Positions 5,455 through 33,379 of a stretch of 33,830 nucleotides of DNA are shown piece by piece. Source of the stretch: Octopus sinensis (taxonomy: Eukaryota); NCBI RefSeq assembly GCF_006345805.1, contig NW_021832115.1:1-33830 (forward strand), given 5' to 3'. Each line of letters begins with the position of its first letter. Position 1 is the first letter of the stretch. The notes beneath the pieces are model-generated. The model did no database searches. It was given only the letters and a program-made list of their open reading frames with translations, and was not told where the DNA came from. The position numbers were made by a program, and so were the translations under genes.

Positions 5455-6586
5455 TCTTTTACTTGTTTCAGTCATTTGACTGCGGCCATGCTGGAGCACC
5501 GCCTTTAGTCGAGCAAATCGACCCCGGGACTTATTCTTTGTAAGCCCAGTACTTATTCTATCGGTCTCTTTTTGCCGAACCGCTAAGTGACGGGTATGTA
5601 AACACACCAGCATCGGTTGTCAAGCAATGCTAGGGGGACAAACACACACACACATATATATATATACATATATACGACAGGCTTCTTTCAGTTTCCGTCT
5701 ACCAAATCCACTCACAAGGCTTTGGTCGGCCCGGGGCTATAGTAGAAGACACTTGCCCAAGGTGCCACGCAGTGGGACTGAACCCGGAACCATGTGGTCG
5801 GTTAGCAAGTTACTTACCACACTCCTGTGCCTAATAGTTTATTTTTGTTTTAAAACCAGGTCTCTTTTTGCGGAACCGCGAAGTTACTGTGACGTAAACA
5901 TAACAACACCGGTTTGTTGAGAAGTTGGGAGTGCGACAAAGACACACTTGCATATGCACATATCTTTTACCTGTCACTGGTTTCAGTCATTTGACCGTGG
6001 CCATGCTGGAGTATTGATTACATCAAAGGGGTCATTTCAAACAAATTAACTCCAGGGACTCTATTTTTTCAAAGCCTAGAACTTATTCTAGTCTCTTGCT
6101 AAACATCTAATTTACGGGGTCGTAAACACATCACCATCAGTTATCCGGGACAAACACAGACATGATACATACGTTGGGCTTCTTTCAGTTTCCATCTACC
6201 AAATCCACTTAAAGCTCTGGTTGGCCTGAGGCCATAGAAGACACCTGCCAAAGGTACCAACGGGACTGAACCTGGAACCATGTGGTTGGGAAGCAAACCA
6301 ATCACTTTTGTTTGTCATTTGACTGTGGCCATGCTGGAGCACCGCCTTTAGTTGAACAAATCAACCCCAATACTTATACTATTAGTCTCTTTTTGCCAAA
6401 CAGCTAAGTTATGGGGGCTACAGAGACACATATATGACGGGCTTCTTTCAGTTTCTGTCTACCAAATCCACACACAAGGCTTTACTCTGCCTGAGGCTAT
6501 AGTAGAAGACTCTTGCCCAAGGTGCCATGCAGTGGGATTGAACCTAGAACCATGTGGTTAGGAAGCAAGCTACTTACCACACAGAC
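5455..6586 (-). mobile_element. Cluster of three co-oriented SINE family 1 copies (about 5455-5830, 5975-6300, 6310-6586)
   Basis: Each has CAGTCATTTGAC..GGCCATGCTGGAG, then CTTCTTTCAGTTTC..TACCAAATCCAC, then GAACC..GAACCATGTGG. Confidence 0.85.
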
Positions 6587-6652
6587 AAAATATAGGAACA
6601 TAAAGGAAAAACTTTAATTATCACTAATTGTGACTGAATAGCAATTTATATA

Positions 6653-9772: not shown

Positions 9773-9840
9773 TCACATGATCTCCACCACGGAACACTCC
9801 TCATCCTCATCTGTATCTCTGTAAATCACAACTTTGGAAT
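9773..9840 (-). CDS. Terminal coding exon (phase 1): xSKVVIYRDTDEDEECSVVEIM*; probably a distal last exon of the Myc-like gene
   Basis: Strong acceptor: GACTAAT branch point, about 25 nt of pyrimidines, then TTGCAG. Phases 0 and 2 stop within 4 and 10 codons; phase 1 gives 21 codons then TGA. I found no other convincing upstream coding exon between 9845 and 16900. Confidence 0.6.
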
Positions 9841-12754
9841 CTGCAATTACAAAGAAAAAAGAAAAAAGGAAAAGAAAATTAGTCACCAATAAAAAAACAA
9901 TTAGCATAAGAAATTACAGCACTAATCATCAACAGTAATTAAGCAAATTATCAGGGCCTGAGTTTTTGAGAACCCCACCCACCTCAAACTAGTCTTTATC
10001 ACCATTTCAAGCCAGTTTACCTTGGTGGCATTTGGGCTAGAAGGGCTGACAGAAGCTAGCTGGGCCAGGAGCCAGACCAGACCTCATAGCCTGTTTTGAC
10101 ATGGGTCTCTGCACATGAATGCTTTTTTAAGGGGGACTAAGAAGGGGTGGAGTAGTATTGAGGGCGTGTTGGTTTGTGCCGGTTGAGATTTGAGCTTAAA
10201 TTCTATCCACAAAAATAATTGGCCAAGATCTAAAGCCATCACCACTACTATTATTATTACTATCCATTATTATTATTATTGAGCGAGAGAGCAGTGCATG
10301 CCATCAAAGTGACACTGGGCACACCAGACACATGCATCACAAACCATATGTGTATGACAGTGATCTCGTACCAGAATAAACCATACATGACCTTGCAGGT
10401 GGAGCCCAGTTAGAATTTTCTTCAGGTTGACTACGCCATGCAGCCCAAAATAAAAAAGATCCCTGAATAAGGGTTGTTTAAGGATGCTGAATGAAACACC
10501 CATCTTTCCAGAGATGAATTATCCAAACCCCAAAGAATTCCTCAATAAGGCTCCCACACTACTTCCTGCTTATGATCAGAGATGCACATATCGTCAGCCA
10601 CTAAGGGACATAATCAACTGGTTAAGGTCAAACGACTGACAAGCAAATCTGTGGTATTCAGCAGAATATTTGCTGTAGCCCATCTCTTATACCGTCCCTC
10701 CTTAACACTTTATTATTGTTATCATTAAAAGATGGAGCTGACAGAACTGTCAGCATCTCGGAGAACCTCACCATCAAATATCTGTTTTTAAAAACAATGA
10801 CAGGATAACATCTATCCCAGCTGAAGTGACCAGACGTGCTACCTTCTTAAATTTTGGCAGACCAGCTAAGGTCCATTGCATATCCAATACCAGGCACTCC
10901 TTTCAGACTATTAGACTTGGTCATTTACACTGCTGTGTCATTTGAGACCATGTCCCATTTACATGTACCTCCTGTTCCTATCCCTGTCATACACTACCTC
11001 TTATATAGCCACTCCTACTGTTAAGTAGGGCCCTTGTTATTTCTGCAAGACACCCAGAGGCCTCACTAGAACAGTGTCACATTGAATAAGGAAAGGAAAC
11101 CACAAAAATAAAGCAAGCCAAAACACAGCCAACACACACACACACCAGAGCTGGCACCACCCAGCCCATAACCACCAGTATGGGAGAAAAGACAAACACA
11201 CACACACACACACATAGCAACAGCCATGCATCACCCTCAATTTAATGTCCACTATTCCACCAGGCCAAAGTTTACAAGCAGGTTCTGTGCCAGGATGCCT
11301 TCCCTGTTCCCAATCCTCATGGGCAGACATTCTCACAGAATACGTGGAAATTAACAAAAAAACGATGTTATGACAGTCACACATTTACAATCAATGCAAG
11401 ACCAAAACAGAGACACAGGCTTCTTACAGTCTCCACTTACTAAATCTTATAGTAACCCAGGTACTCAGCTAAGGTCAAGAGTTCAATTCCTGACAGCATC
11501 TGTCCTTGAGGAAGATGCTTCATTTCACATGTGCCAGTAAACTGGCAAAAACGAGTTTGAAAGGGGCCTGCCCTGTCACAACGAATCTCCCTCTGAGCTA
11601 TATTAAGGGTAGGGAGCAGGCTGTTCCATCGATCAGATCTACTGGAGCACTAGTCGCCATAACCAACAGAAAGCCCGGTCACTGAATCTACCCCACACCC
11701 ACAAGGTTTTGGATGACCCTGGACCCCAGCAGGGAAGACACTCACTCAAGAAGGTTTTCTACACAGCAGAAATGAATTTGGTTGCAGAACAAATTCGTTA
11801 ACCACAGAACCGGGAGGGGCGGGCATCACCTTGAAAGGTTTTAAGACAAACTGGAGTAACTGGGGGACTAGAGGTTGTATCTTTAGGAAATGTATTAACT
11901 ACCCTGTCAGTCATTGAGTTACACAGGGACATAAACAAACCAATACTTGTGAAGGGGAGGGAAAAGGCAACACATATACGTTGTGGAAGATAGAGTCCTA
12001 GGAAGACATCAAATATTGAAAACTGATTTCAATGCTCAACCTGGTAAAGGAGAATGACTAAGGGTAGACGACATACATGAAGTTGTTGTAAGCTTGAAGG
12101 CCCAGCAACCACAACAGAACTGATTGGCAGGGCCCTGTCAATCTGCTGCCCCCATGCATAGGACTGGCTGGTGTTAGGAAGGGTAACCAGCTGCAGAAAC
12201 CCATGTCAAAACAAACAGTGGACCTTGTCGCAGACCCTAAGCTTCCCTTGCCAGCTCCCATGAAACTGACTCATCCCCAGCATTAAACAAGGATTAAAAC
12301 ACTCAAAATAATACAACATACAAGACATTATGTGTGTGATGATTACAAAGATTACTACGGCAAACAAAATACTCTACGAGAAGACGTAATCCAAACTTGC
12401 CCAACACTACTCGAAAATCGCAGCCAAATACAAGCAAAGGGCCCATAAACTTAAGATGTCAGACTTCTGAATATCCTAGTGGTCAGTCAATGAATCGAGG
12501 CCATGCTAGAGCATCAACTTCGACCAAGTCCTAGCCAATCCCACTTTGACGATCTCTAGTTGCCAAACAGCAAATAAGTTTAGGAACGTCCAACGTGAAA
12601 CCTGCAGGACCTGGACAGAGCAGAGGAAATCAACAAGGGACGGGACACAAAAATATGCAGTCCTAGGTACACTGTGACAATGAAGAATAGCCGGAATATC
12701 TATTCTTATGAGGGTGGCTGGATCAGACGGTGTTAGGGTTATAAACAACAAAGG

Positions 12755-13023
12755 ACAGGTGCCAGGGGAGTCTGGCATCGGCCACGATCGGCACGTTAAA
12801 AGCACCAACCGATCGTGGCCGATGCCAGACTCCCCTGGCCCCTGTGCCACGTAAAAAGCACCCACTACACTCAAGGAGTGGTTGGCGTTAGGAAGGGCAC
12901 CCAGCTGTAGAAACATTGCCAAATCAGACTGGAGCCTGGTGCAGCTTCCTGGCTTCCCAGACCCCGGTCGAACCGTCCAACCCGTGCTAGCGCGGAAAAT
13001 GGACGTTAAACGATGATGATGAT
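12755..13023 (+). mobile_element. RTEX-like 3' UTR insertion with a 5' foldback inversion
   Basis: Matches the reverse complement of 31446-31680 and ends (GAT)n; preceded by an inverted copy of its own sequence. Confidence 0.85.
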
Positions 13024-13914
13024 AGGACATTGCTGGAATGCATATCAGATCTGGGGACACGCGACAGGTACACAGTGGCATGGTCACTGGACCCCTGGAA
13101 TTAGTTGTAGTCGGAACGCCAGAAGCAAGAACCCTATACACTATAAATAAGGAGAAAAAAAACTGAGGTGGCCACAACCGGAGTATAAGCGCTCCCCAGT
13201 CAGTCCGAGGCGTGCTCATGGGTGGGGTGGAATCAAGGCTGACAGATTGAATAGGGGGCGATAATACGTCAACAGGAACGGATCTGAAGTGGTGAAGCCT
13301 AGCAAGAAACAACGCCAAGTCTTTTATCCCCACTGCTCTCCTCGCCTCCCCATTCACCCAGCATCCGTCTATTGTTCTTAAACAACCCCTTACACTTTAC
13401 GCAGGAAGCAAAAGGGGTCACCAGTTTAGTAGTTTCAATATCTGTTGAACCCAGCCGGGGCCATTCACTTAAAAAAAAAAAAAAGAAAGAAAGCCTACCG
13501 TCCCATTCACACCGCAACGGAAATACAACAATGAGAATAAAGAGAAAGAAAGAGAGAGTGATAAAGGAGGGAACCATGGAGACGATAAGAAGTGATAGTC
13601 AAAGGGTATATAAAGAGTAAAGACTGGTCAGGTCAAAGGCTAAGACAGCAGGGGTCAGAGTTGAAAACTGATATTTGTCGGCAAGCAACAGATGTAAGAG
13701 AGAGAGACTCGTACGCTCACACACGCTACCAATAAGTACAGGCCACACACAAACACAGAGAATTAGGAACACGCACACACAGACAGACCATGAGTCATAC
13801 CAATTTATAACGAGATATACTAAGAAGATACTGAAAAAAATCTAGCATACAATTTGCACCATCACACAGGAGATTGGCAAACACACACACACACATACAA
13901 GAGAAAACAAGATT

Positions 13915-14430
13915 AAACACACACACACAGGAAATTTAACATTTTATATACTTTGTGTGTATTTATATATATATATAAAACAAGATAAAGCATACATATA
14001 TATACACACACACACACACACACATATATACATACACACACACACATATATACATACACACACATATACACATACACAAATACACACACATATACACAAA
14101 TACATACATATATACACACATACACAAATACATACATATATATACACATACACAAATACATACATATATATACACATACACAAATACATACATATATATA
14201 CACATACACAAATACATACATATATATATATATACATACACATATACATACATATATATTATATACACACATACACGGACGCTATAAAACATGCCAATCA
14301 CTAAATACCATCACACGTATACACAGCAGTTATGGTGTAACGTCTGACATATATATAGACCACACACGCCATTCATTATATAAGAGAAACTATATATATA
14401 TATATATATACATATATATACTTATACATA
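13915..14430. repeat. Compound (CA)/(TA)/(CATA) microsatellite
   Basis: Visible low-complexity tandem units; source of the YIH/CVY-rich pseudo-ORFs. Confidence 0.95.
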
Positions 14431-14729
14431 TGCACACAGCTTGTACACGTACGTGGTGACGTTACCAACATTTGACATTAGCACACACATATACACACAT
14501 TACTCTCCTACACGCCCATATGTGTGTGTATGCGTGCTTGTACGCATTATATATAACGAAGATGTCGATTATATACACACATACATAGAATGGTATACAT
14601 ACATACTCATACATGAACTGCCTGTATGTAGGTGTCTGAGTGTTTTTGTACACCATATGTATAGGGAGGTCGGTTAGTAGGACGAAGAGGTATGTGATAT
14701 GAGGGTGGGGAAGGCCACGGGAGGAAGTG

Positions 14730-15570
14730 AAAGAAAAAGGCAAAGAGAGAGAGAGAGATAGTGAGAGATAAGGACAATGAGAAAGAGTATAGAGAAAGAA
14801 GGGGGAAGCGGAGTGAGAGATAGAGATACAGATATGAAAGAGAAGGCAAGAGGGAGGAATGAGAGAACGAAAGAGAGAGGTTAGAAAGATGAGCGGGGGA
14901 AAGAGAGACGGAGAGAGGAAGCCTAGGAAGAGAGAGAGGAATGAAGGGAAAAACTCAATGGAAAGAGAGGAAGGAAAAGCAGCGAGACACGTTGAGAGAG
15001 GAGAGAGACTGTAGGGAGAGAAAGGGTAGAATGAGAATGAGACGAAGAAGAGAGACGATAGAAGATTAGGAGAGAGGTGAAAGGGTGACGAGGTTTATTA
15101 AGGCCATGGAGAACGGGAAAGAAAGAATTAGAGATTTGAGGAGAGACAAGACAATGAGAGCAAGATTTAGAAGAGACGAGGAGGAAGAAGGGAACAAAGA
15201 AAGGGAGAGGGGGTGGATAACGAAATGAGAGAGAGAGAGAGAAGATATGAAGGGGTGACAAAGAGATAAGAGAGACGTGAGGGGTGAACAAAAGATATAG
15301 AGTGAAAAAGAGAGGTTAAGATACAGAGAGAGAGAGAGAGAGAGATAAGATAAAGTATTCAGAGAGACCGGGGGGATGGGGTAAGTGAGATAAGGGAAGG
15401 AAATACGAGAGGGAGACGTTGAAGAAGAGAAAGGAGACGGCGAAAGAGAGAAGGTAAGAATGTCGGCGACAACAAAGAGAAAATGCTGAACTCTGATTGG
15501 CTGATAATTTCCCGCCACAGGAGCTAGGCTAGAAGAGGCGGGAGATAGTGAGAGAGACAGAGAGAAAGCC
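14730..15570. repeat. GA-rich polypurine low-complexity tract
   Basis: Almost only G and A on the plus strand. Confidence 0.9.
15490..15545. promoter_or_regulatory. CCAAT box plus E2F-type sites (promoter-like module inside the locus)
   Basis: CTGATTGGCT (ATTGG 15496-15500), TTTCCCGC (15508-15515) and GGCGGGAG (15537-15544) within 50 bp. Confidence 0.5.
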
Positions 15571-16815
15571 ATATACAAATAGACTTACACACCTATTTAC
15601 ATAACTATACAATACACACATATATACACACACACACCTATCTAAACATATAAAGTAATACACGTTATACAGCGCAACACGTTTATACACTTAAACACGC
15701 GCAAGCCCCCATATATAGAGGCTCTATACATCGTCACACACACACATCCGCACAGAAGATATCTAACGCACTTTTTCTACACTGATTGGTAGAATTGAAC
15801 ACGCACGCACTCGCATCCATGTAATTTTAATGACTGCCAGTTCACATGTACCTAAAACACTGGCGGACAATGTGCTACATTCGTAATTGTAGGTACAAGG
15901 CACACGCTAAAGTGCATGCGTATATATTTATACACACACATACACAAAACAAATGCGTAGTAGAGTTAAGAAAACGATACACGCCCACAAACACACATAG
16001 ACGAAGCCCTTGTGTGGTTGCTTCGAATGTAAGAAATAACAGCCGAAGTCCTAAGTGCGTCTAATTTACACCAAACCGTTCTGAAACAGAACAAGGCTCG
16101 CTCTTTGCACGAAACTTGCAAACTTAACCATTCATATAATAAAATACACGTGTATAGATATATAAGACCAAAAAGGGTACGGGCGCCGCTATATATATGT
16201 ATATGTAAATAAAATACAAACTGGGACAAGAACGCAAAACACGGACGGGACATTCGAAGCCTTCGATCTTCAGTCAAGAGCCGGATCATCCTCGCAATTT
16301 CAGCTGATTAATCTTGAGATTGCTCCGATCTGGCCAGCCCCAAAGGAAAATCTAGATACATATGTATATACACACGCACAAATGCGTGTAAGCGAGTACT
16401 TCTTAGGGGGTGTCCATAAATAAGCATGTCTTTCCAAAACAGCCATGCGATGAGGGGATATTTGGCTGTTATTTCTAGCTGGTTGAGTGACCAGACCAAA
16501 CCAATACGCCCACCACGCTTTTACACGTTCTGTCGATAAGGGAAAGACAATTATGTACACGCATTTACACCCGTATTAAATAACACCCACCCCAACACTA
16601 CAGGATAAGCAAGTATATACCCATATATGTACCTAGGCACTATTAGAATACCCCTGTCTACGCTTCACTCACAAGTACGCAGCCACTAATGGCGTACATA
16701 AACAGAAATTGCGTAGCAAGCAATTCGCACGCATATACACAGTAATAAGATTGTGTGTGTATAGTGACATTTAGCTGACTACAGAAGATATACTACATAC
16801 ACACGAGCACGCTGT

Positions 16816-17286
16816 GTGTGCGGTCGACATACCATAAATACGCAGTTGCGAAACGGTATGTATGTATGTATGCATGCGCGTGTGAATATACATATATACA
16901 CATACACACACTTATCTTTACCTACTTACGTCGTCAAGCACAGAATATCCACAGTTGATTGTCGTCTGCTGTACTTTCTTGCCCCCGAACTGAGCCCAAA
17001 GCATCGCGAACAGCCCAGCCTAAGGGAAAACAAGCATACAACGCCTGGTTTTGATTATAATAACCGTGTCTATTCACCTAACCCAATGCCCGGGTTCTAT
17101 ATATGTGGTCCGTTCCACATGCCAACACACGAATGCAGCAACATCCGTCTTCTGTGCTGGCATGGATCGGACGGTTATAACAGGATCGATCCAACGAACT
17201 ATTGCGGAACAGCAGCATCAAACCCCGACATCTGCTCTGACACGACTATTATGGTTGGATACCCACCTCAGTGCAATCGATTTTGA
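16816..17286 (+). CDS. Hypothetical ORF with a six-cysteine C-terminal domain, antisense to the Myc-like gene
   Basis: About 118 non-repetitive open codons from 16930; six Cys in the last 60 aa; plus-strand AATAAA at 17529-17534. No signal peptide or recognised family. Confidence 0.3.
   Translation: MCGRHTINTQLRNGMYVCMHARVNIHIYTYTHLSLPTYVVKHRISTVDCRLLYFLAPELSPKHREQPSLRENKHTTPGFDYNNRVYSPNPMPGFYICGPFHMPTHECSNIRLLCWHGSDGYNRIDPTNYCGTAASNPDICSDTTIMVGYPPQCNRF
16930..17019 (-). CDS. Candidate 90-nt cassette exon; read in phase 1 after exon 2 it gives SWAVRDALGSVRGQESTADDNQLWIFCA*
   Basis: Acceptor TTGTTTTCCCTTAG|G at 17020 and donor |GTAAGT at 16929-16924; phase-1 TGA at 16936-16934. Confidence 0.45.
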
Positions 17287-17379
17287 AATGTACTGGGTGC
17301 TGTTTATTTGCTTTGGCACCGGCACCAGTGAGGTTGCCAAGTAACTGGCAAGACAAAACAAATGAGGATATTTGCAAGT

Positions 17380-17413
17380 GTTTAACGTTTCGGACTGTAG
17401 TCCCTCATCAAAC
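17380..17413 (-). ncRNA. Minimal hammerhead-ribozyme-like motif (Penelope type), damaged core
   Basis: Minus strand GTT-TGATGA-G-GGAC-TACA-GTCC-GAAAC-GT-T-AAAC: stem II, GAAA and palindromic ACGT stem III intact; C3 and part of stem I missing. Confidence 0.6.
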
Positions 17414-17807
17414 GAATGATTAAAAGTAACTAGACAAGAAGTAGAAATGTCAAGATGCTTTTAAAATTCGTGAAGAGAATCTGCATTTTAGGTCTTTCCC
17501 TGACTATAAGGATCAGAAGCATGCATTAAATAAACCGCCAACGTACTTAGTGACGTAGGAAGCGAAAGAAACAAGCTTTGAGGTAATGAGGGCAAAAAAC
17601 AGGGTCATATCTATGAAATTACTTAAACAAAGGAGACAGCTTCATGACTTCAGCTGAGCAAGTAATGATAAGACAAACCCCGTTTCTACTTAGACAGAAG
17701 CATCCAACACACTCGAGTATCCTCTCCCAACACAACGAGGCAATCGTACCACAAGTAGTTTCCCAAACATTTTCCTCACATACAAAAAATACTCTTAAAA
17801 AGATGCT

Positions 17808-18382
17808 CTACTTACTTCCATGCAAGTCGTGCCATTCTGATGACAATTCCCGTAACTTAGACTTCAGGAAATCGTTCTCCTTCTTCACCACTTCCATGCG
17901 AGCCTTCATCTCCTTCTCCTCCCGAAGAGCTCGTTCTATACACAGAAGAGCCTCGTCCACTATCCTTTTCTGAGATGCCTTCGGGTCATCCTTCACAGCA
18001 TCGATAACAACTCGGAGCTCGCTCAAAAGCTCACTCATCTGAGCCCTACGCCGCCTTTCCAACTCATTGTGGACAGCCTTTTCGCTGTGAGACATACACT
18101 TGCGCCTCTTAGTCTTTTCACTGAGAAGTCTCTCGTCTGCGGAGCGAGAATTCTTCGTACCCGAACTACCAAACGTGGTCGCAGCCACCGCCACACTGCT
18201 GGTGTTGTCGGATGAAGGCGATGGCGATGAAGATATCAATGAAAATGACGACGATGACGATGATAAAGATTGTGGAGATGGTGGTGTTATCGGCGGTGTT
18301 AGTGGTGAATTCGAGGTGGACACCTCAACAAGGATAGCTGGAGTAACTTTCGTAGCTCGGCGTAAAATCCCTGTTTGACGAG
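17808..18382 (-). CDS. Myc-like bHLH-ZIP transcription factor, coding exon 2
   Basis: Acceptor TTACCTCTTCTATTGCAG at 18383, phase 1. Basic region HNELERRRR keeps the His/Glu/Arg E-box contacts; loop KASQKRIV; zipper EEKEM..LKSKLREL is colinear with the Myc zipper (my alignment from memory). Confidence 0.92.
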
Positions 18383-20734: not shown

Positions 20735-22255
20735 GAGGCCATACAAGTCTTCCTCTTGGTTCAGGCATTGGACTGCGGCGGCCACGCTGGAGCACCACTA
20801 AAGAACTTTAATGCAACGAATCGACCCCTAATACCTTTATTTTTTTTAGAAAAAAAAGCCTGGCATTTATTTTATCAGTTCACGTATGTGGAACTGCTGA
20901 ACTGCTAAGTTACGGGAACAAACCAAGACCGGTTGTCGAGCAATGGCGAGGGACGAACAGACATGTGTATGAGTGTGTGTGTGTATAAATATGTGTTATA
21001 TATACATACATATATATATATGACTATATTAACACACGCACATATTTCGGTGTATGGGAGTATATTTGGACAGCCTTGAATGTGTATGCATGCATGTACG
21101 TGTGTGTGTATATATATATATACACACATACATACACATTCATAAATGTAAAGCCGCCTAAGCCAGTGTGTATACATATATTCACATGTGTCTGTATGTA
21201 TGTATGTTTCCTATTTGCCAGTAAATTTTGAAGGAAAGGTGGGACCCCCGAAAATGACGAAAGGCAAAGTTGACCCCGACGTTGTTTGAACTAAGAACGT
21301 CAAACGGCCGGAAGAAATGCCGCGAAGCATTTTTATCCGGCAAATCAACGATTTTCCAGCCGCCGCCTTAGAGTACACATCCGTACATTGTGTGTGCGTG
21401 CGTGTGTGTGTATATATATTATATATATTTACACAATTGTCTTCACTTAGCTAATATTGTGTGTATGTATGTATGTGTGTGTGTGTGTGTGTGTGTGTGA
21501 GGCCATACAAGTCTTCCTCTTGGTTCAGGCATTGGACTGCGGCGGCCACGCTGGAGCACCACTAAAGAACTTTAATGCAACGAATCGACCCCTAATACCT
21601 TTATTTTTTTTAGAAAAAAAGCCTGGCATTTATTTTATCAGTTCACGTATGTGGAACTGCTGAACTGCTAAGTTACGGGAACAAACCAAGATCGGTTGTC
21701 GAGCAATGGCGAGGGACGAACAGACATGTGTATGAGTGTGTGTGTGTATAAATATGTGTTATATATACATACATATATATATATATGACTATATTAACAC
21801 ACGCACATATTTCGGTGTATGGGAGTATATTTGGACAGCCTTGAATGTGTATGCATGCATGTACGTGTGTGTGTGTATATATATATACACACATACATAC
21901 ACATTCATAAATGTAAAGCCGCCTAAGCCAGTGTGTATACATATATTCACATGTGTCTGTATGTATGTATGTTTCCTATTTGCCAGTAAATTTTGAAGGA
22001 AAGGTGGGACCCCCGAAAATGACGAAAGGCAAAGTTGACCCCGACGTTGTTTGAACTAAGACGTCAAACGGCCGGAAGAAATGCCGCGAAGCATTTTTAT
22101 CCGGCAAATCAACGATTTTCCAGCCGCCGCCTTAGAGTATACATCCGTACATTGTGTGTGCGTGCGTGTGTGTGTATATATATTATATATATTTACACAA
22201 TTGTCTTCACTTAGCTAATATTGTGTGTATGTATGTATGTGTGTGTGTGTGTGTG
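20735..22255. repeat. Near-identical 764-bp tandem duplication (units start 20735 and 21499)
   Basis: GAGGCCATACAAG at 20735 and 21499; TTAGCTAATATT at 21447 and 22211; only a few substitutions and small indels; each unit holds a family 1 and a family 2 SINE remnant. Confidence 0.95.
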
Positions 22256-24215: not shown

Positions 24216-24951
24216 CTTTTCTTTTCTTTATCATTTTAGGGGATATTAACCTTTCCTTTTCGTTAACCTTTTTGCTTTTCACATTAGCAGTCTTTCGGGG
24301 CCGACCCGGTTTGCCCTTGCGTTTTCTGTTACGAACGGCCTTTTTGGAAACGGAGGCGGTTTGTCGTTGCCGACGTCGACCGCCGGCAGCACCGGCGCCG
24401 CTTTGCTTCTCCTCAGTTTGATGATAAGGGTGGTCCTCGACTACATTCCGGGACACGGCGGGACTTGAACACACATTCACTTCGCCATCGTCATCATCAT
24501 CATCATCATCCTCATCATCTCCTTGTATCTCTGCATCCATGGCCTCGACGTGACCATAACTATTAGCGACCACGAACGAAGCAAAGTTCATCGATTCTTC
24601 GTCGTGGCTAAACCTCGATGGAGACATCGAAGGCGAACCCGACGATTTGGGCGATGAGAAAGGGCTCGTACGAGGGGACCACAATTCGTCCTGGCTCAAC
24701 AGCTCAGGGCATTTAGAAGGAAAGTTGTCATCCGGCACCGTGTCTTCACACGTAATCCTATTCTTTCCCCAATCGGGGATCTCGATTTCTGGCCATTCGG
24801 CCGGCTTCCACATAAATTTCGGCAGGTTTTCTTCCGACCAAATGATGGGATCTTGGGATAAGATACTGATCGGATCATAGCAGTACAAGTAATCGTCAGT
24901 GTTGGTTATTTTACAGGGAGACAGTTCGAACACGTCTTTGATTAATTCCAT
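24216..24951 (-). CDS. Myc-like bHLH-ZIP transcription factor, coding exon 1
   Basis: ACCATGG start; 245 codons plus 1 nt, then G|GTAAGC donor whose phase matches exon 2 (..IKKRK-A-RQTG..). Contains LLSQDELWS (Myc box II-like), acidic run plus EVNV (box IIIb-like), EDHPY (box IV/HCF-1 motif) and a basic NLS with KPGRPRK. Confidence 0.88.
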
Positions 24952-25374
24952 GGTTTAAATAAGTAAATTGTGTGCGGGGGTATATGATAATTGTGTGTGG
25001 AGAAATTTGCGTATGGGTTCTCACAGATAAAAATGGGCTAAATACGAGGATAATACGGGTACACAGCAGAGGTAGGTAATTGTAGGGTAATTTTTTAAAA
25101 AATATTAAATTATTCGTATAATGAAATTAATAAATTAATTATCTTTTTGTCCGTGTTTGCCGGGAAAATAATGTTGAGTGCGTGTACGAATATCTATGTC
25201 TGTGTGTGAGATGTATGAATTCCAGTTTAAAATTGAAGGCACAGAATCAGGAAATATTAAAAGAGAAATATGGTAAATGGTATGGTTAATCTCCAGTTCG
25301 GTTAGAATCTTGCTTAGACCAGCGAGATAATTCACAAGACACCGTACACGGCACGTACAAGACAAACACCTGTG

Positions 25375-25432
25375 AGTGAAGAAGTCACGGCTTGCGCCAA
25401 ATGCGTTGCATTATATAGAGGGAGGCGGAGCC
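25375..25432 (-). promoter_or_regulatory. Core promoter of the Myc-like gene
   Basis: Minus strand order: GC box (CTCCGCCTCCC 25430-25420), TATATAA (25417-25411), E2F site TTTGGCGC (25401-25394), Inr-like TGACTT/TCACT (25387-25375). No ATG in the ~430-nt leader. Confidence 0.7.
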
Positions 25433-25509
25433 AAGGCAGCTGTCAATCATCTCCGTCTCCTCCCTGGCCTTTCACATTCAGTAGAAGAGGGAATCGTAAA
25501 CGTCATCAT

Positions 25510-26225
25510 CTCCTCCTCCTCTCTCTCTCTCTTTCACCCTTTCTCTTTCGATCCCTCTTACTCTCCCTCACTCTTTCTTTATATATATTTACATATTCTT
25601 TCACTCTTTCATATTTCTCTTTCTTTCTTTCTTTCTTTTTAAATTTCTTTTGTCTTTGTCTTTCGCCTTTTCTATCCCCTCTCTCTTTTTTCTTTCATTC
25701 TATCCCTTCTTTCTTTCTTTCTCTCTCCTCTTCCTTCTTTCCTTTCTTTCTTTCTTTCCTTTTTCCTTCTTTTCTTTCCTTCTTTCTCTCTTTCTTTCTT
25801 TCTTTCCTTCATACTTTCTTTCTTTCTTTTTTCCTTCCTTTCTTTCCTTCTTTCATTCTTCCTTCCTTCCTTCCTTTCTTTCTTTCTCTCTTTCTTTCTT
25901 TCTTTCCTTCATACTTTCTCTTGTTTCCTTCTATCCCCTTATTATTTCTTTCCTTCCTTCTTTCTTTCGTTCTTCCTTCCTTTCTTTCTTTCTATCCTCT
26001 CTTTCTTTTTTCCTTCCTTCTTTCTTTTTCTCTTTTGTCCTTTCTCTCTTTCTTTCTTTCTATCCCCTCTTTTTTCGTTCTTCCTTCCTTTCTTTCTTTC
26101 TATCCTCTCTTTCTTTCCTTCCTTCCTTCTTTCTTTCTCTCTTTTGTCCTTTCTCTCTTTCTTTCTTTCTATCCCCTCTTTTTTCTTTCTTTCCTTCCGT
26201 CTTTCTTTCTTTCCTTCTTTCCTTG
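25510..26225. repeat. Polypyrimidine (CT/CTTT/CCTT) microsatellite
   Basis: About 700 bp of almost pure C/T on the plus strand. Confidence 0.95.
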
Positions 26226-26287
26226 ATGCTCTATTGTCTATTCCTTAAAGTCGGTTGTGTGTGTGTGTGTGTGTGTGTGTGTTATCT

Positions 26288-26436
26288 TTTACTCCTTTCA
26301 GTCATTAGACTGTGGCCATGCTGGAGCACCGTCTGAAAGGGTTTCTTTTTAGTCAAAGAATCTGACCCCAAGACTTATTCTTTGTAAGCCAAAGTACTTA
26401 TTCTACCGGTCCCTATTGCCGAACCGCTAAGTTATA
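26288..26436 (-). mobile_element. SINE family 1, 3' fragment
   Basis: CAGTCATTAGACTGTGGCCATGCTGGAGCACCG..GCCGAACCGCTAAG. Confidence 0.8.
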
Positions 26437-26485
26437 CACATGTGTGAGTGTCTGTGCGTGTGTGTATGTGTGTGTGTGTGTGTGT

Positions 26486-26969
26486 GGCATAAGATTTGGT
26501 CATCAAATCTAAGTAGAGACTTCAAACTTGAAATCTTCAAAGCCACAGTCGAACCAATTCTACTATATGGCTCAGACACCTGGATGTTATCAAAGAAGCT
26601 TGAGAGGCGGTTGGATGGAACCTACACTCGCCTCCTTATGAGAGCTCAAAATCTCTCGTGGAAGCGTCATCCAACCAAAATGCAAATATATGGGAAACTA
26701 CCACCTGTGTCATCTCTTGTGAAAGGTAGGAGAGTCCAGTTTGCTGGACATTGTTGTAGAGCTGAAAAAGAAGTAATTTCTAGTCTTCTCCTCTGGAAAC
26801 CCTCTGCTCGCAATACCAGAGGACGCACACTCTCCTACCCTGATGTAATCTCCAGGGATACAGGCATCCAGCAACAGGACCTCCGTAATGCCATGATGGA
26901 CCGTGAAGTCTGGCGTAACATAGTAAATTCCATTGTCTCGACAACGGTCGAACAATGATGATGATGATG
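26486..26969 (+). mobile_element. 5'-truncated RTE-clade LINE, ORF2 C-terminus intact
   Basis: IFKATVEPILLYGSDTW..RRVQFAGHC.R..LLLWKP..MMDREVWR; stop TGA 26956-26958 starts the (TGA)n tail. Confidence 0.9.
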
Positions 26970-27204
26970 TGTGTGTGTGTGTGTGTGTGAAGTTTTAGCA
27001 CCAATAGAATATAATTCAAGCCATGAAGGAGTTGGCCAATATCTTCAGTGGTGGTCAGCATTACAAAATCAAATCTGCTGACAAATGGTATTATTACCAT
27101 CCTGGGGCTGTAACTGAGGGGAGAAAATGTAACGATTGTTTGGGACTTCGCAGTATGTTACAGACCAGACCATCAGAGCTAATAAAACGGGATGTTCTTT
27201 TTTT

Positions 27205-27392
27205 CTTTTACTTGTTTCAGTCATGTGACTGCGGCCATGCTGGAGCACCGCCTTTAGTCGAGCAAATCAACCCCAGGACTTATTCTTTGTAAGCCCAGAA
27301 CTTATTCATTCTATCAATATCTTTTGCTGAACTGCTAAGTTACGAGGACGTAAGTGCACCAGCATCGGTTGTCCAGCAATGTTCATGGGGGA

Positions 27393-27465
<73 letters not shown>

Positions 27466-27492
27466 ACACACACACACATACACACACACACC
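27205..27492 (-). mobile_element. SINE family 1 3' half plus (CA)n
   Basis: CAGTCATGTGACTGCGGCCATGCTGGAGCACCGCC..GGGGGACAAAC then (CA)n. Confidence 0.85.
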
Positions 27493-27897
27493 TAAAGCTC
27501 CACGAGGCTCAGCAGGGTGGGGGCCACGACCCCTGTTGTACTCTTTCGCCCCCAAATTTCTCTCACTCTTTCTTCCTGTTTCTTGTCCCCGACTTCCTAC
27601 GCAGCCGCTGAGCCTGGATGCACATTCATCCATCATCCGTCGACGCTCTCGGGTGTCGGGGGGTTGACCTGCTTACTCTTCTGCGGGTCTTACGAATAGC
27701 AAAGGACCACGTTTCGGACTACTCCCATCTTGCGAGCTCTGGGACGAAGACCGTTTGCTCAACAGCAACAGCAACAACACTATCACCAGCAATAACATCA
27801 GTAATAACAACGACAGCAGTGGCAATATCCGTAACAGAAATAGCAGCAGAGCCTTCGCCAATGATATCTATAGCAACAGTGATGATGACCATAACAA

Positions 27898-28191
27898 CAT
27901 CATCATCATCATCATTGTTCGACCGTTGTCGAGACAATGGAATTTTACCATGTTACGCCAGACTTCACGGTCCATCATGGCATTACGGAGGTCCTGTTGC
28001 TGGATGCCTGTATCCCTGGAGATTACATCAGGGTAGGAGAGTGTGCGCCCTCTGGTATTGCGAGTAGATGGCTTCCAGAGGAGAAGAGTAGAAATTACTT
28101 CTTTTTCAGCTCTACAACAATGTCCAGCAAACTGGACTCTCCTACCTTTCACAAGAGATGACACAGGTGGTAGTTTCCCATATATTTGCAT
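27898..28191 (-). mobile_element. Second copy of the same RTE LINE, shorter and inverted
   Basis: Reverse complement of about 26680-26969 with roughly 6 differences. Confidence 0.9.
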
Positions 28192-28343
28192 ATATATATA
28201 ACAACAACACCATTACCAACACCAGTAGCGAAGGCACCAACACCTCTGCCACATCTAGTGACACCAACACCCACAGCACCGGTACCAACAACAGTGGTAG
28301 CAGCAATGCCAATACTAACAATTGCAGCACTACCATCAACACC

Positions 28344-28700
28344 TGGCCACAGAGATACATCAGTTGTTCTGGTAACACTTTCAAACAATGCTTCTCCAAC
28401 CACAAATACTCCCTCAGGATATGGGGAAAGAGATACGTTACATCACTAGCCAGCCATGTGTGGCAGCTGAAAGACAATGGAATTCCATACACAACAACAT
28501 GGAGAATCCTTGAAAACCCAGGCTCCTACGGAAACGGGACCAAGCATTGTGAACTATGCATAGTGGAATGGGTGAGGATTCTAAAGGATTCCCTTGACCC
28601 GGGGAACATCCTACACTCCAGAACAGAGATCTTCTGACCGTGCTTGCATCTCAGGAAATTCTTGCCGGCCTATTGGAACCCACAAGATAACAGGGTCATT
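28344..28700 (+). mobile_element. Decayed GIY-YIG endonuclease of a Penelope-like element
   Basis: RYISCSGNTFKQCFSNHK..TSLASHVWQLKD..WRIL..CELCIVE..LHSRTEIF*PCLH fits the YIG..FK.R..NH..LS.HIW.LK..W.IL..C.LC..E..LN.R.E...C.H pattern, with YIG to YIS, Arg to Cys and an internal stop at 28635. Confidence 0.8.
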
Positions 28701-28859
28701 TGCATCGATAGCCAAAGGGAGATAATCTCCTGTTGTTGGCATTGAGTAGTGAGGTCCTTTCTTCTTCCATATTCTAGAAAGGTCACTCACTAGAGAGACC
28801 TTAACCCTTTCGTTACTGTATAAGGACGGATGGATGGGTGGAGAGAATGACAAACAGAT

Positions 28860-29186
28860 AAAGCATGTATGAGAGAGAGAGAGAGAGAGGGTGAAAGAGA
28901 AAGAGGAAGAGAAATACAGTGATAGACAGACAGACTGACTGACAGAGTCACGAGATATAAAGACAGAGTAGCAGGGGTAGAGAGAGAGAGAGAAAGACAG
29001 AGACAAACAGACAAATCATACACAAGAGAAAGAGAAAGAGACAGAATGACAGATAGACAAAGCACACATGAGAGAAAGAGAGAGAGAGAGAGAAAGAAAG
29101 AGAGAGAGACAGACAAATAGACAGACAGATAGACAGACAGACAGACAAATAGACAGACAGACAGACAGACAGATAGACAGACAGAC

Positions 29187-29245
<59 letters not shown>

Positions 29246-29326
29246 TAGACAGACAGACAGACAGACAGATAGACAGACAGACAGATAGACAGACAGACAG
29301 ACAGATAGACAGACAGACAGACAGAC

Positions 29327-29361
<35 letters not shown>

Positions 29362-29422
29362 TAGACAGACAGATAGACAGACAGACAGACAGACATACAG
29401 ACAGATAGACAGACAGACAGAC

Positions 29423-29459
<37 letters not shown>

Positions 29460-29640
29460 TACAGACAGATAGACAGACAGACAGACAGACAGATAGAGAG
29501 ACAGACAGACAGACAGACAGATAGACACAGACAGACAGACAGACAGACAGATAGACAGACAGACTGACAGATAGATAGACAGACAGATAGACAGATAGAC
29601 AGATAGACAGACAGACTGACAGACAGACAGACAGACAGAC

Positions 29641-29671
<31 letters not shown>

Positions 29672-29688
29672 TAGACAAACAGACAGAC

Positions 29689-29747
<59 letters not shown>

Positions 29748-29820
29748 TAAACAGACAGACAGACAGACAGACAGACAGATAGACAGACAGACTGACAGAT
29801 AGACAGACAGACAGACAGAC

Positions 29821-29851
<31 letters not shown>

Positions 29852-30080: not shown

Positions 30081-30114
30081 AATGTATATACAAGTGTGTG
30101 CGTGTGTATGTCAT

Positions 30115-31242: not shown

Positions 31243-33066
31243 CTAACAGTATCGCCCGGCGTTGCTCGGGTTTGTTTCGACCCTTTGGAATTGAAATTTT
31301 TGAAAAGTAAAAGTTTTGCCCTATGTAGCTTGTTATTCTCTTTAGGTGAACATTTTTCTGGTTGAAATACACCAAAGAATGGTGACACAGCAGTCAAAAT
31401 ATCGTAAAAAATAGGGATTTTCATAGAAAAAAAGCACCTTTTTGATCATCATCATCGTTTAATGTCCGTTTTCCGCGCTAGCACGGGTTGGACGGTTCGA
31501 CCGGGGATCTGGGAAGCCGGAAGGCTGCATCAGGCCCAGTCTGATCTGGCAGTGTTTCTACAGCTGGATGCCCTTCCTAATGCCAACCACTCCGAGAGTG
31601 TATTGTGTGCTTTTTACGTGCCACCGGCACAGGTGCCAGGGGAGGCTGGCATCGGCCACGAGCGGTTGGTGCTTTTAACGAGCCACCGACACAGAAGCCA
31701 GTCAAGGCGGCGCTGGCATCGGCCACGTTCGGATGGTGCTTTTTATGTGCCACTGGCACAGGTATCACAACTACTATTTCCATTGATATTTATTTCGATG
31801 TTGATGTACTTGACTCAATAGGTCTCCTCAAGCACAGCGGGATGTTCTGGTATCCAAGGTACTTTGAATGGGTGGGGGCTATGCGGGAAGCAGCCCGGGT
31901 CTTTGCAGTCACAGCATGTCTCCAGAGATCTCGGTCCTTTGTCATTGCCTCAGTGAGGCCCAAGCTCTGAGGTCATGCTTGACTACCTCATCCCATGTCT
32001 TCCTGGGTCTACCTCTCCCCCTGATTCCTTCAACTGTTTGGGAGCGGTACTTCTTCACACATCTCTCCTCATCCATCCGCAGTACATGACCATACCATCG
32101 CAAGCGTCGCTCTTGCACACCACATCTGATGCTTTTTATGTCCAGCATTTCTCTGAGGGTGCTTACCCTCTGTCGTGCGCGCACACTGACAATACACATC
32201 CAGCGGATCATGCTAGCTTCATTCCTTTCAAGTCTACGCATGTCCTCTGCAGTCACAGCCCGTGAAGCATGGCGGTTCGCACACATGCATCATACAATCT
32301 ACCTTTCACTCTGAGCGAGAGACCCTTTGTCGCCAGTAGGGGTAGGAGCTTTCTAAACTTTGCCCAGGCTATTCGTATTCTAGTGGTGACACTCTCTGAG
32401 CATCCACCTCTACTACTAACTTGGTCACCCAGGTAGCGGAAACTATCAACTACTTCTAGTTTCTCCCTCTGGAGTGTGATGGAATCTGTTTTCTGAGTAT
32501 TTGTGGTGTCTATTGTCCCTGTGCATCTGCCGCACATGAAAGCTATCTTATCAGTTAATTTCTCTTTGATGTTGCTGCACCTCTTATGCGTCCATAGCTT
32601 ACACTGGGTACATCTTATGGAGTTTCTATCTACACCTTTCCTACAGATCGAGCAGGGCCACCTGCCCGAGGGTGTGTGTGCTGAGTTCGCCTTTCTGCTC
32701 ACTATAACTTTGGTCTTTGCTACATTTACTCTAAGGCCCTTTGATTCTAACCCTTGCTTCCACACCCGAAATTTCTTTTCTAGTTCCGGTAGTGATTCTG
32801 CTATGAGAGCCAGGTCATCAGCATAGAGGAGCTCCCAGGGGCAACCTGTTTTGAATTCCTCTGTTATTGCCTGGAGGACTATAAATCATTTTTGGTGTTA
32901 GCATGGTCTGATTTGAATTTTTTCTTCTACGGAATGAAGAGCAAGCCTTCTTTTATCATACTCTCAATTTTGGTCAACTTGTGCCACAGGGTCTCAGAGG
33001 AGATAGTGTTAGATGAAGGCTACCAAACCTGCCATACACACACAGACAACTTCAGCTTTATATATA

Positions 33067-33069
<3 letters not shown>
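31243..33069 (-). mobile_element. Non-autonomous Helitron copy C (different internal sequence), interrupted by a LINE
   Basis: Same 3' hairpin CCCGAGCAACGCCGGG with TTAG end at 31246-31243; 5' TCTTATATATAAAGCTGAAGTTG at 33069; interrupted at about 31446-32880. Confidence 0.8.
31446..32880 (-). mobile_element. 5'-truncated RTEX-like LINE: RT C-half, PHD-type finger, 3' UTR, (GAT)n tail
   Basis: WELLYADDL (YADD 32825-32814), GLRVNVAKTK, FRYLG, RLRWYGHV.R, GRPRKTW; frameshifts near 32270 and 31955. Confidence 0.92.
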
Positions 33070-33121
<52 letters not shown>

Positions 33122-33126
<5 letters not shown>

Positions 33127-33328
33127 TTAATCCAAACAAGAAAGCACAAAAAAACACAACAACGCGAGGATGTGGAACAAATATAGTATTATTGGACGCT
33201 CAGGAAAGAAGGAGGGTTTAACGTTTCGAGCGGAGCTCTTCGTCGGAAACATAGGAGAAGGAAAGATCCAGAGAAGGGAAGACGGAGGGAAAAAATCGCC
33301 AACGGTACACACGAGGTCACATTTTGAA

Positions 33329-33330: not shown

Positions 33331-33379
<49 letters not shown>

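What the first reader, a model, noticed from the sequence alone, without database searches (positions are those of the whole stretch)
17380..17413. Hammerhead-like motif on the sense strand between the Myc-like stop and its poly(A) signal
Seen: the motif lies about 400 nt after the 17808 stop, about 70 nt before a minus-strand AATAAA (17308-17303), and inside the 17815-17020 intron. It shares GAAACGTTAAAC with the copy at 33216-33250. Known: Penelope elements carry minimal hammerheads with palindromic stem III that cleave as dimers. Inference: cleavage would remove the poly(A) tail of the unspliced isoform but spare spliced ones. C3 and stem I are damaged here, so it may be a relic.
Basis: partly seen in the sequence, partly recalled or inferred. 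Interest (0 to 1): 0.7.

Follow-up and report, generated by a model that had tools for sequence, protein, structure and literature searches.

The report
Decayed hammerhead ribozyme relic in intron
The flagged 34 bases are a real but broken leftover of a retrotransposon-type minimal hammerhead ribozyme, lying in an intron of an octopus Myc-like gene and drifting like the DNA around it, so it is an ordinary molecular fossil, not a switch that trims the mRNA.

Summary
The motif exists as described, on the minus (gene-sense) strand at 17413-17380: GUUUGAUGA-G-GGAC-UACA-GUCC-GAAA-CG-UU|AAAC. A second copy lies at 33250-33216. Under a descriptor using the traits published for Penelope-like-element (PLE) minimal hammerheads, these are the only two hits in the window. 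Shuffles give 0.025 hits on average, and 0 of 400 gave two or more.

Each copy carries one lesion in the catalytic core: C3 is lost or replaced in copy 1, and U4 is C in copy 2. Rfam hammerhead models match neither.

The window is a whole 33,830-bp Octopus sinensis scaffold. The gene is LOC115228325, named 'myc proto-oncogene protein-like' in O. vulgaris. The annotated protein splices from the 17815 donor to an acceptor at 9841, not 17020, so the motif sits 400 nt inside a 7,975-nt intron.

The motif is present at the orthologous site in O. vulgaris and O. bimaculoides, and C3 is missing in all three species. O. bimaculoides also has two of four helix II pairs broken, a 23-nt insertion in the motif, and no AATAAA. 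The motif is a local minimum of conservation.

Verdict: an inert PLE/retrozyme-type hammerhead relic. The proposed poly(A)-removing function is not supported.

The parts
17380..17413 (-). Copy 1: degenerate minimal type-I hammerhead. Position 3 = U17411 in place of C (or C3 deleted). U4-A9 = 17410-17405. Extra G = 17404. Helix II = GGAC 17403-17400 / GUCC 17395-17392, with loop UACA 17399-17396. G12-A15.1 (GAAA) = 17391-17388. Palindromic C15.2-G16.2 = 17387-17386. U16.1 = 17385 and U17 = 17384. The notional cleavage site lies between 17384 and 17383. Helix I 3' strand AAAC = 17383-17380.
   Evidence: Sequence; descriptor hit; no Rfam match; orthologous copies.
33216..33250 (-). Copy 2: the same architecture with helix I intact. 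Helix I = GUUU 33250-33247 / AAAC 33219-33216. Core = CCGACGA 33246-33240, with U4 replaced by C. Extra A = 33239. Helix II = GAGC 33238-33235 / GCUC 33231-33228. GAAA = 33227-33224, CG = 33223-33222, UU = 33221-33220.
   Evidence: Identical in O. vulgaris (L003 3448-3474). No ortholog found in O. bimaculoides. No Rfam match.
33059..33121 (.). (TA)32 microsatellite flanking the copy-2 segment on one side.
33333..33376 (.). (TA)22 microsatellite flanking the copy-2 segment on the other side. The ~210-nt unique segment 33122-33332 carrying copy 2 lies between the two arrays.
   Evidence: PLE insertion bias for microsatellites is reported in PMC8557442. This is suggestive only, because the genome is rich in microsatellites.
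17816..18382 (-). Coding exon 2 of the Myc-like bHLH-zipper gene LOC115228325. The HLH domain lies in this exon.
   Evidence: Pfam HLH E=5e-8; in-frame splice model; alignment to annotated orthologs.
9841..17815 (-). Intron 2 (7,975 nt), from donor GTAAGT at 17815-17810 to acceptor ...ttgcag at 9841. Copy 1 lies 400 nt from its 5' end. If the intron is retained, the in-frame TAG at 17810-17808 terminates the ORF.
9773..9840 (-). Coding part of exon 3 (N)SKVVIYRDTDEDEECSVVEIM plus the stop codon.
   Evidence: tblastn; sequence; identical C-terminus in the O. vulgaris and O. bimaculoides proteins.
24216..24951 (-). Coding exon 1 of the same gene.
17303..17308 (-). It is intronic. It is present in O. 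vulgaris and removed by a 4-nt deletion in O. bimaculoides.

Best explanation
Copy 1 is an inactive remnant of a minimal type-I hammerhead of the kind carried in the pseudo-LTRs of Penelope-like retroelements and their non-autonomous derivatives (non-LTR retrozymes).

History (inferred): a short fragment bearing the ribozyme landed, in sense orientation, in intron 2 of the Octopus Myc-like bHLH-zipper gene before O. bimaculoides split from the O. vulgaris/O. sinensis lineage. Using copy 2 as a paralogous outgroup, the family ancestor would read GUUU-CUGAYGA-R-GRRC...GYYC-GAAA-CG-UU-AAAC, which is a perfect min-HHR.

Lesions (shown): copy 1 lost C3 before the three species diverged. O. sinensis later lost 5 more nucleotides from the helix I side. 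O. bimaculoides accumulated two pair-breaking substitutions in helix II and a 23-nt insertion.

Consequence (inferred): the motif does nothing today. It is transcribed as part of the intron, folds preferentially into a plain extended hairpin, is not expected to self-cleave, and is removed with the intron.

Shown: presence, architecture, excess over chance, orthology, the lesions, and the lack of constraint. Inferred: the PLE/retrozyme origin (no flanking element sequence survives) and catalytic inactivity (not assayed).

Excess over chance:
- These are the only two hits in the window, against 0.025 expected.
- In 123 kb of other cephalopod loci there are no further hits at <=1 mismatch apart from the orthologs.
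- The two copies share a 13-mer with 0.03 expected.
- They differ in helix II by two double (compensatory) changes: G-C/A-U versus A-U/G-C.

Lack of function:
- Each copy has one core lesion.
- Orthologous copies exist in O. vulgaris and O. bimaculoides, with C3 absent in all three species.
- Motif identity to O. bimaculoides is 46.8% counting gaps, the 2.4th percentile of intron 34-mers. Counting substitutions only it is 29/34, against an intron median of 82%. The motif is a local conservation minimum.
- The predicted MFE structure pairs U4-G8 with C15.2-A1.1: -11.7 kcal/mol, 72% of the ensemble, against -4.9 for helix II alone.
- The motif is intronic in the annotated mRNA.
Against: - No PLE ORF, pseudo-LTR, target-site duplication or repeated flank could be found around either copy. 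The PLE origin therefore rests on about 35 nt of architecture.
- Helix II is 4 bp, shorter than the 6-8 bp described for PLE min-HHRs in flatworms and flies.
- Descriptor thresholds were set after seeing the motif.
- No genome-wide Octopus scan was possible, so no intact family member has been seen.
- Inactivity is inferred from classic hammerhead core requirements (my knowledge: the C3-G8 pair is essential in Martick and Scott 2006 and in earlier mutagenesis). It was not measured.
Confidence: 0.8

Rival explanations
1. Chance look-alike. The 34 nt is ordinary intron sequence that happens to resemble a hammerhead, and the second copy is a coincidence.
For: - A loose hammerhead descriptor with one core mismatch is met at chance frequency: 3 loci against 2.6 +/- 1.8.
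- No Rfam hammerhead model scores either copy, even at E<=10 on about 110-140 nt.
- No flanking similarity between the copies.
- The monomer fold z-score is only -1.9.
Against: - With the independently published PLE traits, only these two loci match, against 0.025 expected, and 0 of 400 shuffles gave >=2.
- The shared 13-mer has 0.03 expected.
- Helix II differs by two compensatory double changes.
- Real cephalopod DNA (123 kb) gives no extra hit at <=1 mismatch.
Confidence: 0.1
2. A still-active, dimer-dependent hammerhead cleaves after GUU in the intron-retaining transcript. This removes the tail added after the AATAAA at 17308 and selectively destroys the unspliced isoform.
For: - The motif is on the sense strand, between an in-frame stop (17810-17808) and an AATAAA.
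- GAAA, A15.1-U16.1, the GUU cleavage triplet and helix II are intact in O. sinensis and O. vulgaris.
- PLE hammerheads are reported to act as dimers (PMC4209133; PMC6765202).
Against: - C3 is absent or replaced in all three species, and helix I in register is 1 bp here.
- O. bimaculoides has 2 of 4 helix II pairs broken, a 23-nt insertion, and the AATAAA deleted.
- Conservation is lowest at the motif.
- Even intact PLE min-HHRs show no monomer activity and low dimer activity in vitro.
- No second copy lies in the same transcript.
- The predicted fold sequesters the core.
- No evidence was found for an isoform polyadenylated near 17290.
Confidence: 0.03
3. Exapted structure. The 8-bp + 4-bp extended hairpin formed by the relic serves another role, for example a protein-binding or splicing-modulating element in intron 2.
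For: - The hairpin is the dominant predicted fold in O. sinensis (72% of the ensemble, -11.7 kcal/mol).
- A similar fold is predicted for O. vulgaris.
Against: - The z-score is -1.9 in O. sinensis and -1.1 in O. vulgaris, neither exceptional.
- The fold is not kept in O. bimaculoides (z -0.24, a different MFE).
- Indels hit the stem in two lineages.
Confidence: 0.03

Closest known systems
Minimal hammerheads (min-HHR) in the pseudo-LTRs of Penelope-like elements (Cervera and de la Pena 2014, PMC4209133; Lunse, Weinberg and Breaker 2017, cited in PMC6765202)
   Same: - Type-I topology.
- An extra nucleotide between A9 and 10.1.
- A G10.1-C11.1 pair.
- No closed helix III, only a palindromic ACGU that can pair solely between two copies.
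- A short 4-bp helix I (copy 2, and the O. vulgaris form of copy 1).
- Copies with variable sequence and compensatory changes.
   Different: - The core is broken: C3 lost in copy 1, U4 replaced by C in copy 2.
- Helix II is 4 bp rather than 6-8 bp.
- No pseudo-LTR, no RT/GIY-YIG ORF and no tandem partner were found nearby.
- These are solitary fragments in introns.
Non-LTR retrozymes: tandem repeats with type-I hammerheads expressed as small circRNAs (PMC7229834; bioRxiv 10.64898/2026.07.22.740005)
   Same: Type-I hammerhead with a very weak palindromic helix III. Derived from PLE terminal sequences. Present in molluscs.
   Different: Retrozymes are tandem arrays of 150-400-nt units with intact ribozymes. 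Here there is a single damaged unit with no tandem repeat. The 2026 preprint reports that retrozymes are depleted from introns.
[quoted passage not shown]
   Same: A hammerhead-type motif on the sense strand of an intron of a protein-coding gene.
   Different: The amniote motifs are ultraconserved, with an intact core and a stable helix III, and they match Rfam models. This one has a broken core, is the least conserved part of its intron, and matches no Rfam model.
Discontinuous hammerhead in rodent Clec2 3' UTRs (Martick et al. 2008; from my own knowledge, not read here)
   Different: In Clec2 the core is intact and cleavage was demonstrated. Here the region is an intron of the annotated mRNA, the core is defective, and the AATAAA is not conserved.

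Membership tests
PLE-type minimal type-I hammerhead (min-HHR) | Catalytic core 5' half C3-U4-G5-A6-N7-G8-A9 | tested here: not met
   Copy 1 reads U-UGAUGA, so C3 is replaced or deleted, in O. sinensis, O. vulgaris and O. bimaculoides. Copy 2 reads CCGACGA, with U4 replaced by C.
PLE-type minimal type-I hammerhead (min-HHR) | Catalytic core 3' half G12-A13-A14, A15.1-U16.1, H17 not G | tested here: met
   GAAA-CG-U-U in both copies.
PLE-type minimal type-I hammerhead (min-HHR) | Unpaired nucleotide between A9 and 10.1, and a G10.1-C11.1 pair closing helix II (PMC4209133) | tested here: met
   Copy 1: G, then GGAC/GUCC. Copy 2: A, then GAGC/GCUC. Helix II is 4 bp, shorter than the 6-8 bp reported.
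PLE-type minimal type-I hammerhead (min-HHR) | Palindromic 15.2-16.2 with no closed helix III (dimer-dependent) | tested here: met
   A-CG-U is palindromic in both copies.
PLE-type minimal type-I hammerhead (min-HHR) | Helix I of about 4-5 bp in register with the core | tested here: not met
   Copy 1 has 1 bp in O. sinensis and 2 bp in O. vulgaris when U is taken as position 3. Copy 2 has 4 bp, GUUU/AAAC.
PLE-type minimal type-I hammerhead (min-HHR) | Located in a pseudo-LTR next to an RT + GIY-YIG ORF, usually in tandem or partial-tandem copies | tested here: not met
   No repeated flanks in about 190 kb. No RT or GIY-YIG Pfam hit among the 10 largest non-repetitive ORFs. No tandem array. A genome-wide search was not possible.
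PLE-type minimal type-I hammerhead (min-HHR) | Covariation that maintains the helices across copies | tested here: inconclusive
   Copy 1 versus copy 2: two compensatory double changes in helix II (n=2 paralogues). Across orthologues: O. bimaculoides breaks 2 of 4 helix II pairs without compensation.
PLE-type minimal type-I hammerhead (min-HHR) | Self-cleavage after H17, as a dimer | not testable with these tools
   This needs in vitro transcription or RNA-end mapping. 2D prediction favours a non-catalytic hairpin.
Rfam hammerhead families (Hammerhead_1, _3, _II, HH9, HH10) | Covariance-model score at or above the gathering threshold | tested here: not met
   No hammerhead hit at gathering level. 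None at E<=10 on the whole window or on about 110-140-nt excerpts of copy 1, copy 2 and the O. vulgaris copy 1. By my own knowledge of those models (not checked here), the Rfam hammerhead families expect a closed helix III, so even intact min-HHRs may score poorly.
Conserved gene-regulatory hammerheads (amniote intronic HH9/HH10; Clec2 3' UTR type) | Purifying selection on the core and helices at the orthologous position | tested here: not met
   The motif is at the 2.4th percentile of intron conservation, with two lineage-specific indels and pair-breaking substitutions.

The most novel reading that the evidence does not exclude
The relic keeps residual catalytic competence. The best candidate is the O. 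vulgaris-type allele, where GUUU/AAAC helix I survives and U could stand in at position 3. With chaperones, or by pairing in trans through the ACGU palindrome, it could cleave intron-retaining Myc-like transcripts and add a layer of post-transcriptional control to a proto-oncogene homologue in cephalopods.
Probability: 0.02. Interest if true: 0.6.

Novelty: new member of a known kind. Interest (0 to 1): 0.1.

Why it matters
It matters little biologically. This is one more decayed copy of a ribozyme type already known to litter invertebrate genomes, and it is spliced out with its intron.

It has three minor uses:
- It shows that PLE/retrozyme-type minimal hammerheads left traces in Octopus that predate the O. 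bimaculoides / O. vulgaris split.
- It illustrates that Rfam models miss this minimal class, while a literature-based descriptor separates it from chance.
- It corrects the gene model: the Myc-like gene has a third coding exon at 9840-9773, so the flagged region is intronic and not a 3' UTR.

If the motif were active, it would be a rare case of ribozyme control of a Myc-family gene. The evidence argues against that.

Tried and rejected
1. Rfam at gathering and at E<=10, on the whole window and on short excerpts of all copies, gave no hammerhead hit. The sub-threshold mir-297/mir-466 hits are TG/TA microsatellite artefacts.
2. A loose hammerhead descriptor performed at chance level and was replaced by the PLE-specific one (then 14, 16). 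One shuffle run timed out.
3. blastn of the flanks of the two copies against each other, the window, and L001-L004 showed nothing beyond the 13-16-nt core. No element boundaries or target-site duplications could be defined.
4. A protein search with exon 2 alone found only a 95-aa Logan ORF. Its 1,066-bp contig (L001) ends 319 nt after the exon, just short of the motif, and is barely alignable there.
5. The Argonauta hians locus (L004) has an intron that is not alignable and no min-HHR-like hit. It therefore says nothing about the age of the insertion.
6. A MAFFT alignment of the five copies (A3) put copy 2 out of register, so I did not use it for the count of structure pairs or a covariance model. 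The structural alignment was made by hand.
7. AG and GTAAGT/GTGAGT are conserved around 17019-16932, but indels of +1 and -2 nt between species rule out a conserved coding exon.
8. An empty site for copy 2 in O. bimaculoides could not be found, because there is no upstream anchor within L002.
9. Lunse et al. 2017 (PMC5785218) is not held, so it is cited only through PMC6765202.

Full report
**What is at the coordinates**

The minus strand from 17413 to 17380 reads GUUUGAUGAGGGACUACAGUCCGAAACGUUAAAC. In hammerhead numbering it parses as follows:
- Position 3 is U17411, where the consensus has C.
- U4-G5-A6-U7-G8-A9 is 17410-17405.
- An extra G lies at 17404.
- Helix II is GGAC/GUCC with loop UACA (17403-17392).
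- G12-A13-A14-A15.1 is 17391-17388.
- C15.2-G16.2 is 17387-17386, U16.1 is 17385 and U17 is 17384.
- AAAC (17383-17380) would be the 3' strand of helix I.

The second copy, minus strand 33250-33216, reads GUUU-CCGACGA-A-GAGC-UCC-GCUC-GAAA-CG-UU-AAAC.

**Is it more than chance?**

The answer depends on the descriptor.
- A generic type-I descriptor (core with one mismatch, helix II of at least 3 bp) finds 3 loci in the window. Dinucleotide shuffles give 2.6 +/- 1.8, which is chance level. The second copy is not even among the three.
- Cervera and de la Pena (PMC4209133) list traits of Penelope-like-element (PLE) minimal hammerheads that were not built into their own search. [quoted passage not shown]
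- Both copies have all four traits. A descriptor that requires them returns exactly these two loci at <=1 and at <=2 core mismatches.
- 400 shuffles give a mean of 0.025 loci at <=1 mismatch. No shuffle gave two.
- The shared 13-mer CGAAACGTTAAAC has 0.03 matches expected.
- In 123 kb of other cephalopod DNA fetched later, the descriptor finds only the orthologues plus one 2-mismatch hit. That agrees with the shuffle background.
- The two copies differ in helix II by two double changes that keep pairing: G-C/A-U versus A-U/G-C.

I set the thresholds after seeing the motif, so the p-value is approximate. Even so, chance is a poor explanation.

Rfam finds no hammerhead at any threshold for any copy. 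As far as I know (not checked here), the Rfam hammerhead models expect a closed helix III, so this negative result is weak.

**Gene context**

- Exon-level ORFs and Pfam show a bHLH domain in 17811-18323.
- A two-exon model (24951-24216 joined to 18382-17811) is in frame. It matches, at 97-98% and 87-89% identity, the annotated proteins 'myc proto-oncogene protein-like' of O. vulgaris and LOC106881876 of O. bimaculoides.
- The 90% cluster also holds XP_029654790.1 (LOC115228325, Octopus sinensis). Its longest contig is 33,830 bp, exactly the window length, so the window is that O. sinensis scaffold.
- All annotated proteins continue after ...HDLHG with NSKVVIYRDTDEDEECSVVEIM. That sequence is encoded at 9840-9773, behind a strong polypyrimidine tract and AG.
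- Intron 2 is therefore 17815-9841 (7,975 nt). The motif lies 400 nt inside it, on the sense strand.
The segment 17019-16932 keeps AG and GT(A/G)AGT in three species, but it differs by +1 and -2 nt indels, so it is not a conserved coding exon.
- The 17808 stop and the 17308 AATAAA would matter only in an intron-retaining transcript. I found no evidence for one.

**Orthologues**

I fetched the O. vulgaris (L003) and O. bimaculoides (L002) loci and aligned them. The motif is present at the orthologous site in both, so the insertion predates their split.

By hand, the structural alignment is:

| Copy | Helix I 5' | Core | Extra nt | Helix II 5' | Loop | Helix II 3' | 3' part |
|---|---|---|---|---|---|---|---|
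| Copy 2 | GUUU | CCGACGA | A | GAGC | UCC | GCUC | GAAA CG UU AAAC |
| Copy 1, O. vulgaris | GUUU | -UGAUGA | G | GGAC | UAGA | GUCC | GAAA CG UU AAAC |
| Copy 1, O. sinensis | GUU | -UGAUGA | G | GGAC | UACA | GUCC | GAAA CG UU AAAC |
| Copy 1, O. bimaculoides | GUUU | -UGAUGA | A | AGGC | UACA | AUCC | GAAA CG [UUGAGUCUUGGCCUUCCCUGCCG] UU AAAC |

- C3 is missing, or equivalently replaced by U with helix I shortened, in all three species.
- O. sinensis has a further 5-nt deletion on the helix I side.
- O. bimaculoides has A10.1 opposite C11.1 and C10.4 opposite A11.4, so two of four pairs are broken.
- O. bimaculoides also has a 23-nt insertion. It is judged an insertion because copy 2 has the uninterrupted GAAACGUUAAAC.
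- Identity to O. bimaculoides across the 34 nt is 46.8% counting gaps, the 2.4th percentile of all 34-mers in the aligned intron. Counting substitutions only it is 29/34, like the intron median of 82%.
- The 50-nt identity profile has a local minimum (0.48-0.52) exactly at the motif. Exon 2 is at 0.92 overall, and the intron is mostly at 0.8-0.9.
- The AATAAA is lost in O. bimaculoides.
- A more distant octopod contig (L001) ends before the motif. The Argonauta intron is not alignable.

**Copy 2**

- It is identical in O. vulgaris (L003 3448-3474), and no orthologue was found in O. bimaculoides.
- It sits in a ~210-nt unique segment between (TA)32 and (TA)22. This fits the microsatellite insertion bias reported for PLEs (PMC8557442). 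The genome is so rich in microsatellites that the clue is weak.
- It lies 8.3 kb upstream of the Myc-like start codon. In O. vulgaris it falls within the range of a NIPA-like gene on the opposite strand. It cannot act as a cis partner for copy 1.

**Folding**

- The monomer MFE pairs GUUUGAUG with CGUUAAAC. This buries U4-G8, the cleavage site and helix I in one 8-bp stem stacked on helix II: -11.7 kcal/mol, 72% of the ensemble, z = -1.9.
- A hammerhead-type secondary structure is worth only about -5 to -6 kcal/mol.
- Predicted homodimers are plain extended duplexes.

**Mechanism**

The best reading is that nothing happens. The motif is a fossil of a PLE/retrozyme-type minimal hammerhead. It is transcribed within intron 2 and removed by splicing.

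Intact PLE min-HHRs show no monomer cleavage and only low dimer cleavage in vitro. This copy lacks C3, which from my own knowledge must pair with G8 in the active site. It has almost no helix I and no partner copy. The comparative pattern is neutral decay.

**Comparison with known systems**

- It works like nothing at present. It descends from, and structurally resembles, PLE min-HHRs and the type-I hammerheads of non-LTR retrozymes.
- It fails membership as a functional hammerhead on the core, on helix I and on genomic context. It passes on four architectural traits.
- It differs from the ultraconserved amniote intronic hammerheads and from the Clec2 3' UTR hammerhead in every respect that makes those functional.

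**Novelty and limits**

This is a new, decayed member of a known kind, and of low interest. I could not scan whole Octopus genomes, inspect RNA data or assay cleavage. These are listed as decisive next steps.

Noticed in passing
window 31447-32881: About 1.4 kb present here but absent from the O. vulgaris orthologue: window 32882 and 31446 map to adjacent L003 positions 3797/3799. It carries minus-strand ORFs (32253-32765 with a PHD finger; 31942-32286) that look like the C-terminal part of a non-LTR (LINE) reverse-transcriptase protein. This is a lineage-specific retrotransposon insertion.
   Followed up: partly
window 21126-21494 and about 21891-22255: Both stretches map to the same O. vulgaris segment (L003 12687-13050), and Rfam pseudo-hits recur at a 765-nt spacing (21078/21843). 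This indicates a tandem duplication of about 765 bp in intron 1 of O. sinensis relative to O. vulgaris.
   Followed up: partly
window 26680-26927 and 27944-28191: A 248-nt inverted repeat, 98% complementary, 1 kb apart. The arms encode near-identical ORF fragments (…GRRVQFAGHCCRAEKEVIS…DREVWRN…) typical of LINE C-termini. This is an inverted pair of young retroelement fragments upstream of the gene.
   Followed up: no
window 17019-16932 (minus strand): An 88-nt segment flanked by a conserved AG and GTAAGT/GTGAGT in O. sinensis, O. vulgaris and O. bimaculoides, and fairly well conserved (0.8-0.94). It has +1 and -2 nt indels and an in-frame stop. It could be an unannotated non-coding or poison cassette exon, or nothing.
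   Followed up: partly
window 17498-17572 and 17438-17473 (minus strand): An intronic block 92-96% identical to O. bimaculoides just upstream of the motif, well above the 82% intron median. It is followed by a stretch (about 43 alignment columns) that is deleted in O. vulgaris only.
   Followed up: no
window 1755-1981, 2718-2944, 5642-5822, 6419-6587, 33674-33825 and others: Many copies (85-93% alike, both orientations) of a 150-230-nt SINE-like repeat that often ends in microsatellite. The same repeat occurs several times in the O. vulgaris and O. bimaculoides loci.
   Followed up: no
window 1673-1739, 13951-14029, 21078-21146, 30615-30685 etc.: Sub-threshold Rfam hits to mir-297, mir-466, mir-3149 and similar (E down to 6e-9, but all below gathering scores) fall on TG/TA/CA microsatellites and are composition artefacts.
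   Followed up: yes
L003 1-9681 (corresponds to window about 25300-33830, + strand): In O. vulgaris a 431-aa NIPA-like Mg transporter gene (PF05653) is annotated on the opposite strand, directly upstream of the Myc-like gene. Hammerhead copy 2 lies antisense within its range.
   Followed up: no
L001 (Logan SRR11869384, 1,066 bp): An unidentified octopod with 88% amino-acid identity in the bHLH exon keeps the CATGGAAGTAAGTAG junction. Its sequence diverges strongly right after the splice donor, as expected for intron rather than a conserved 3' UTR.
   Followed up: partly
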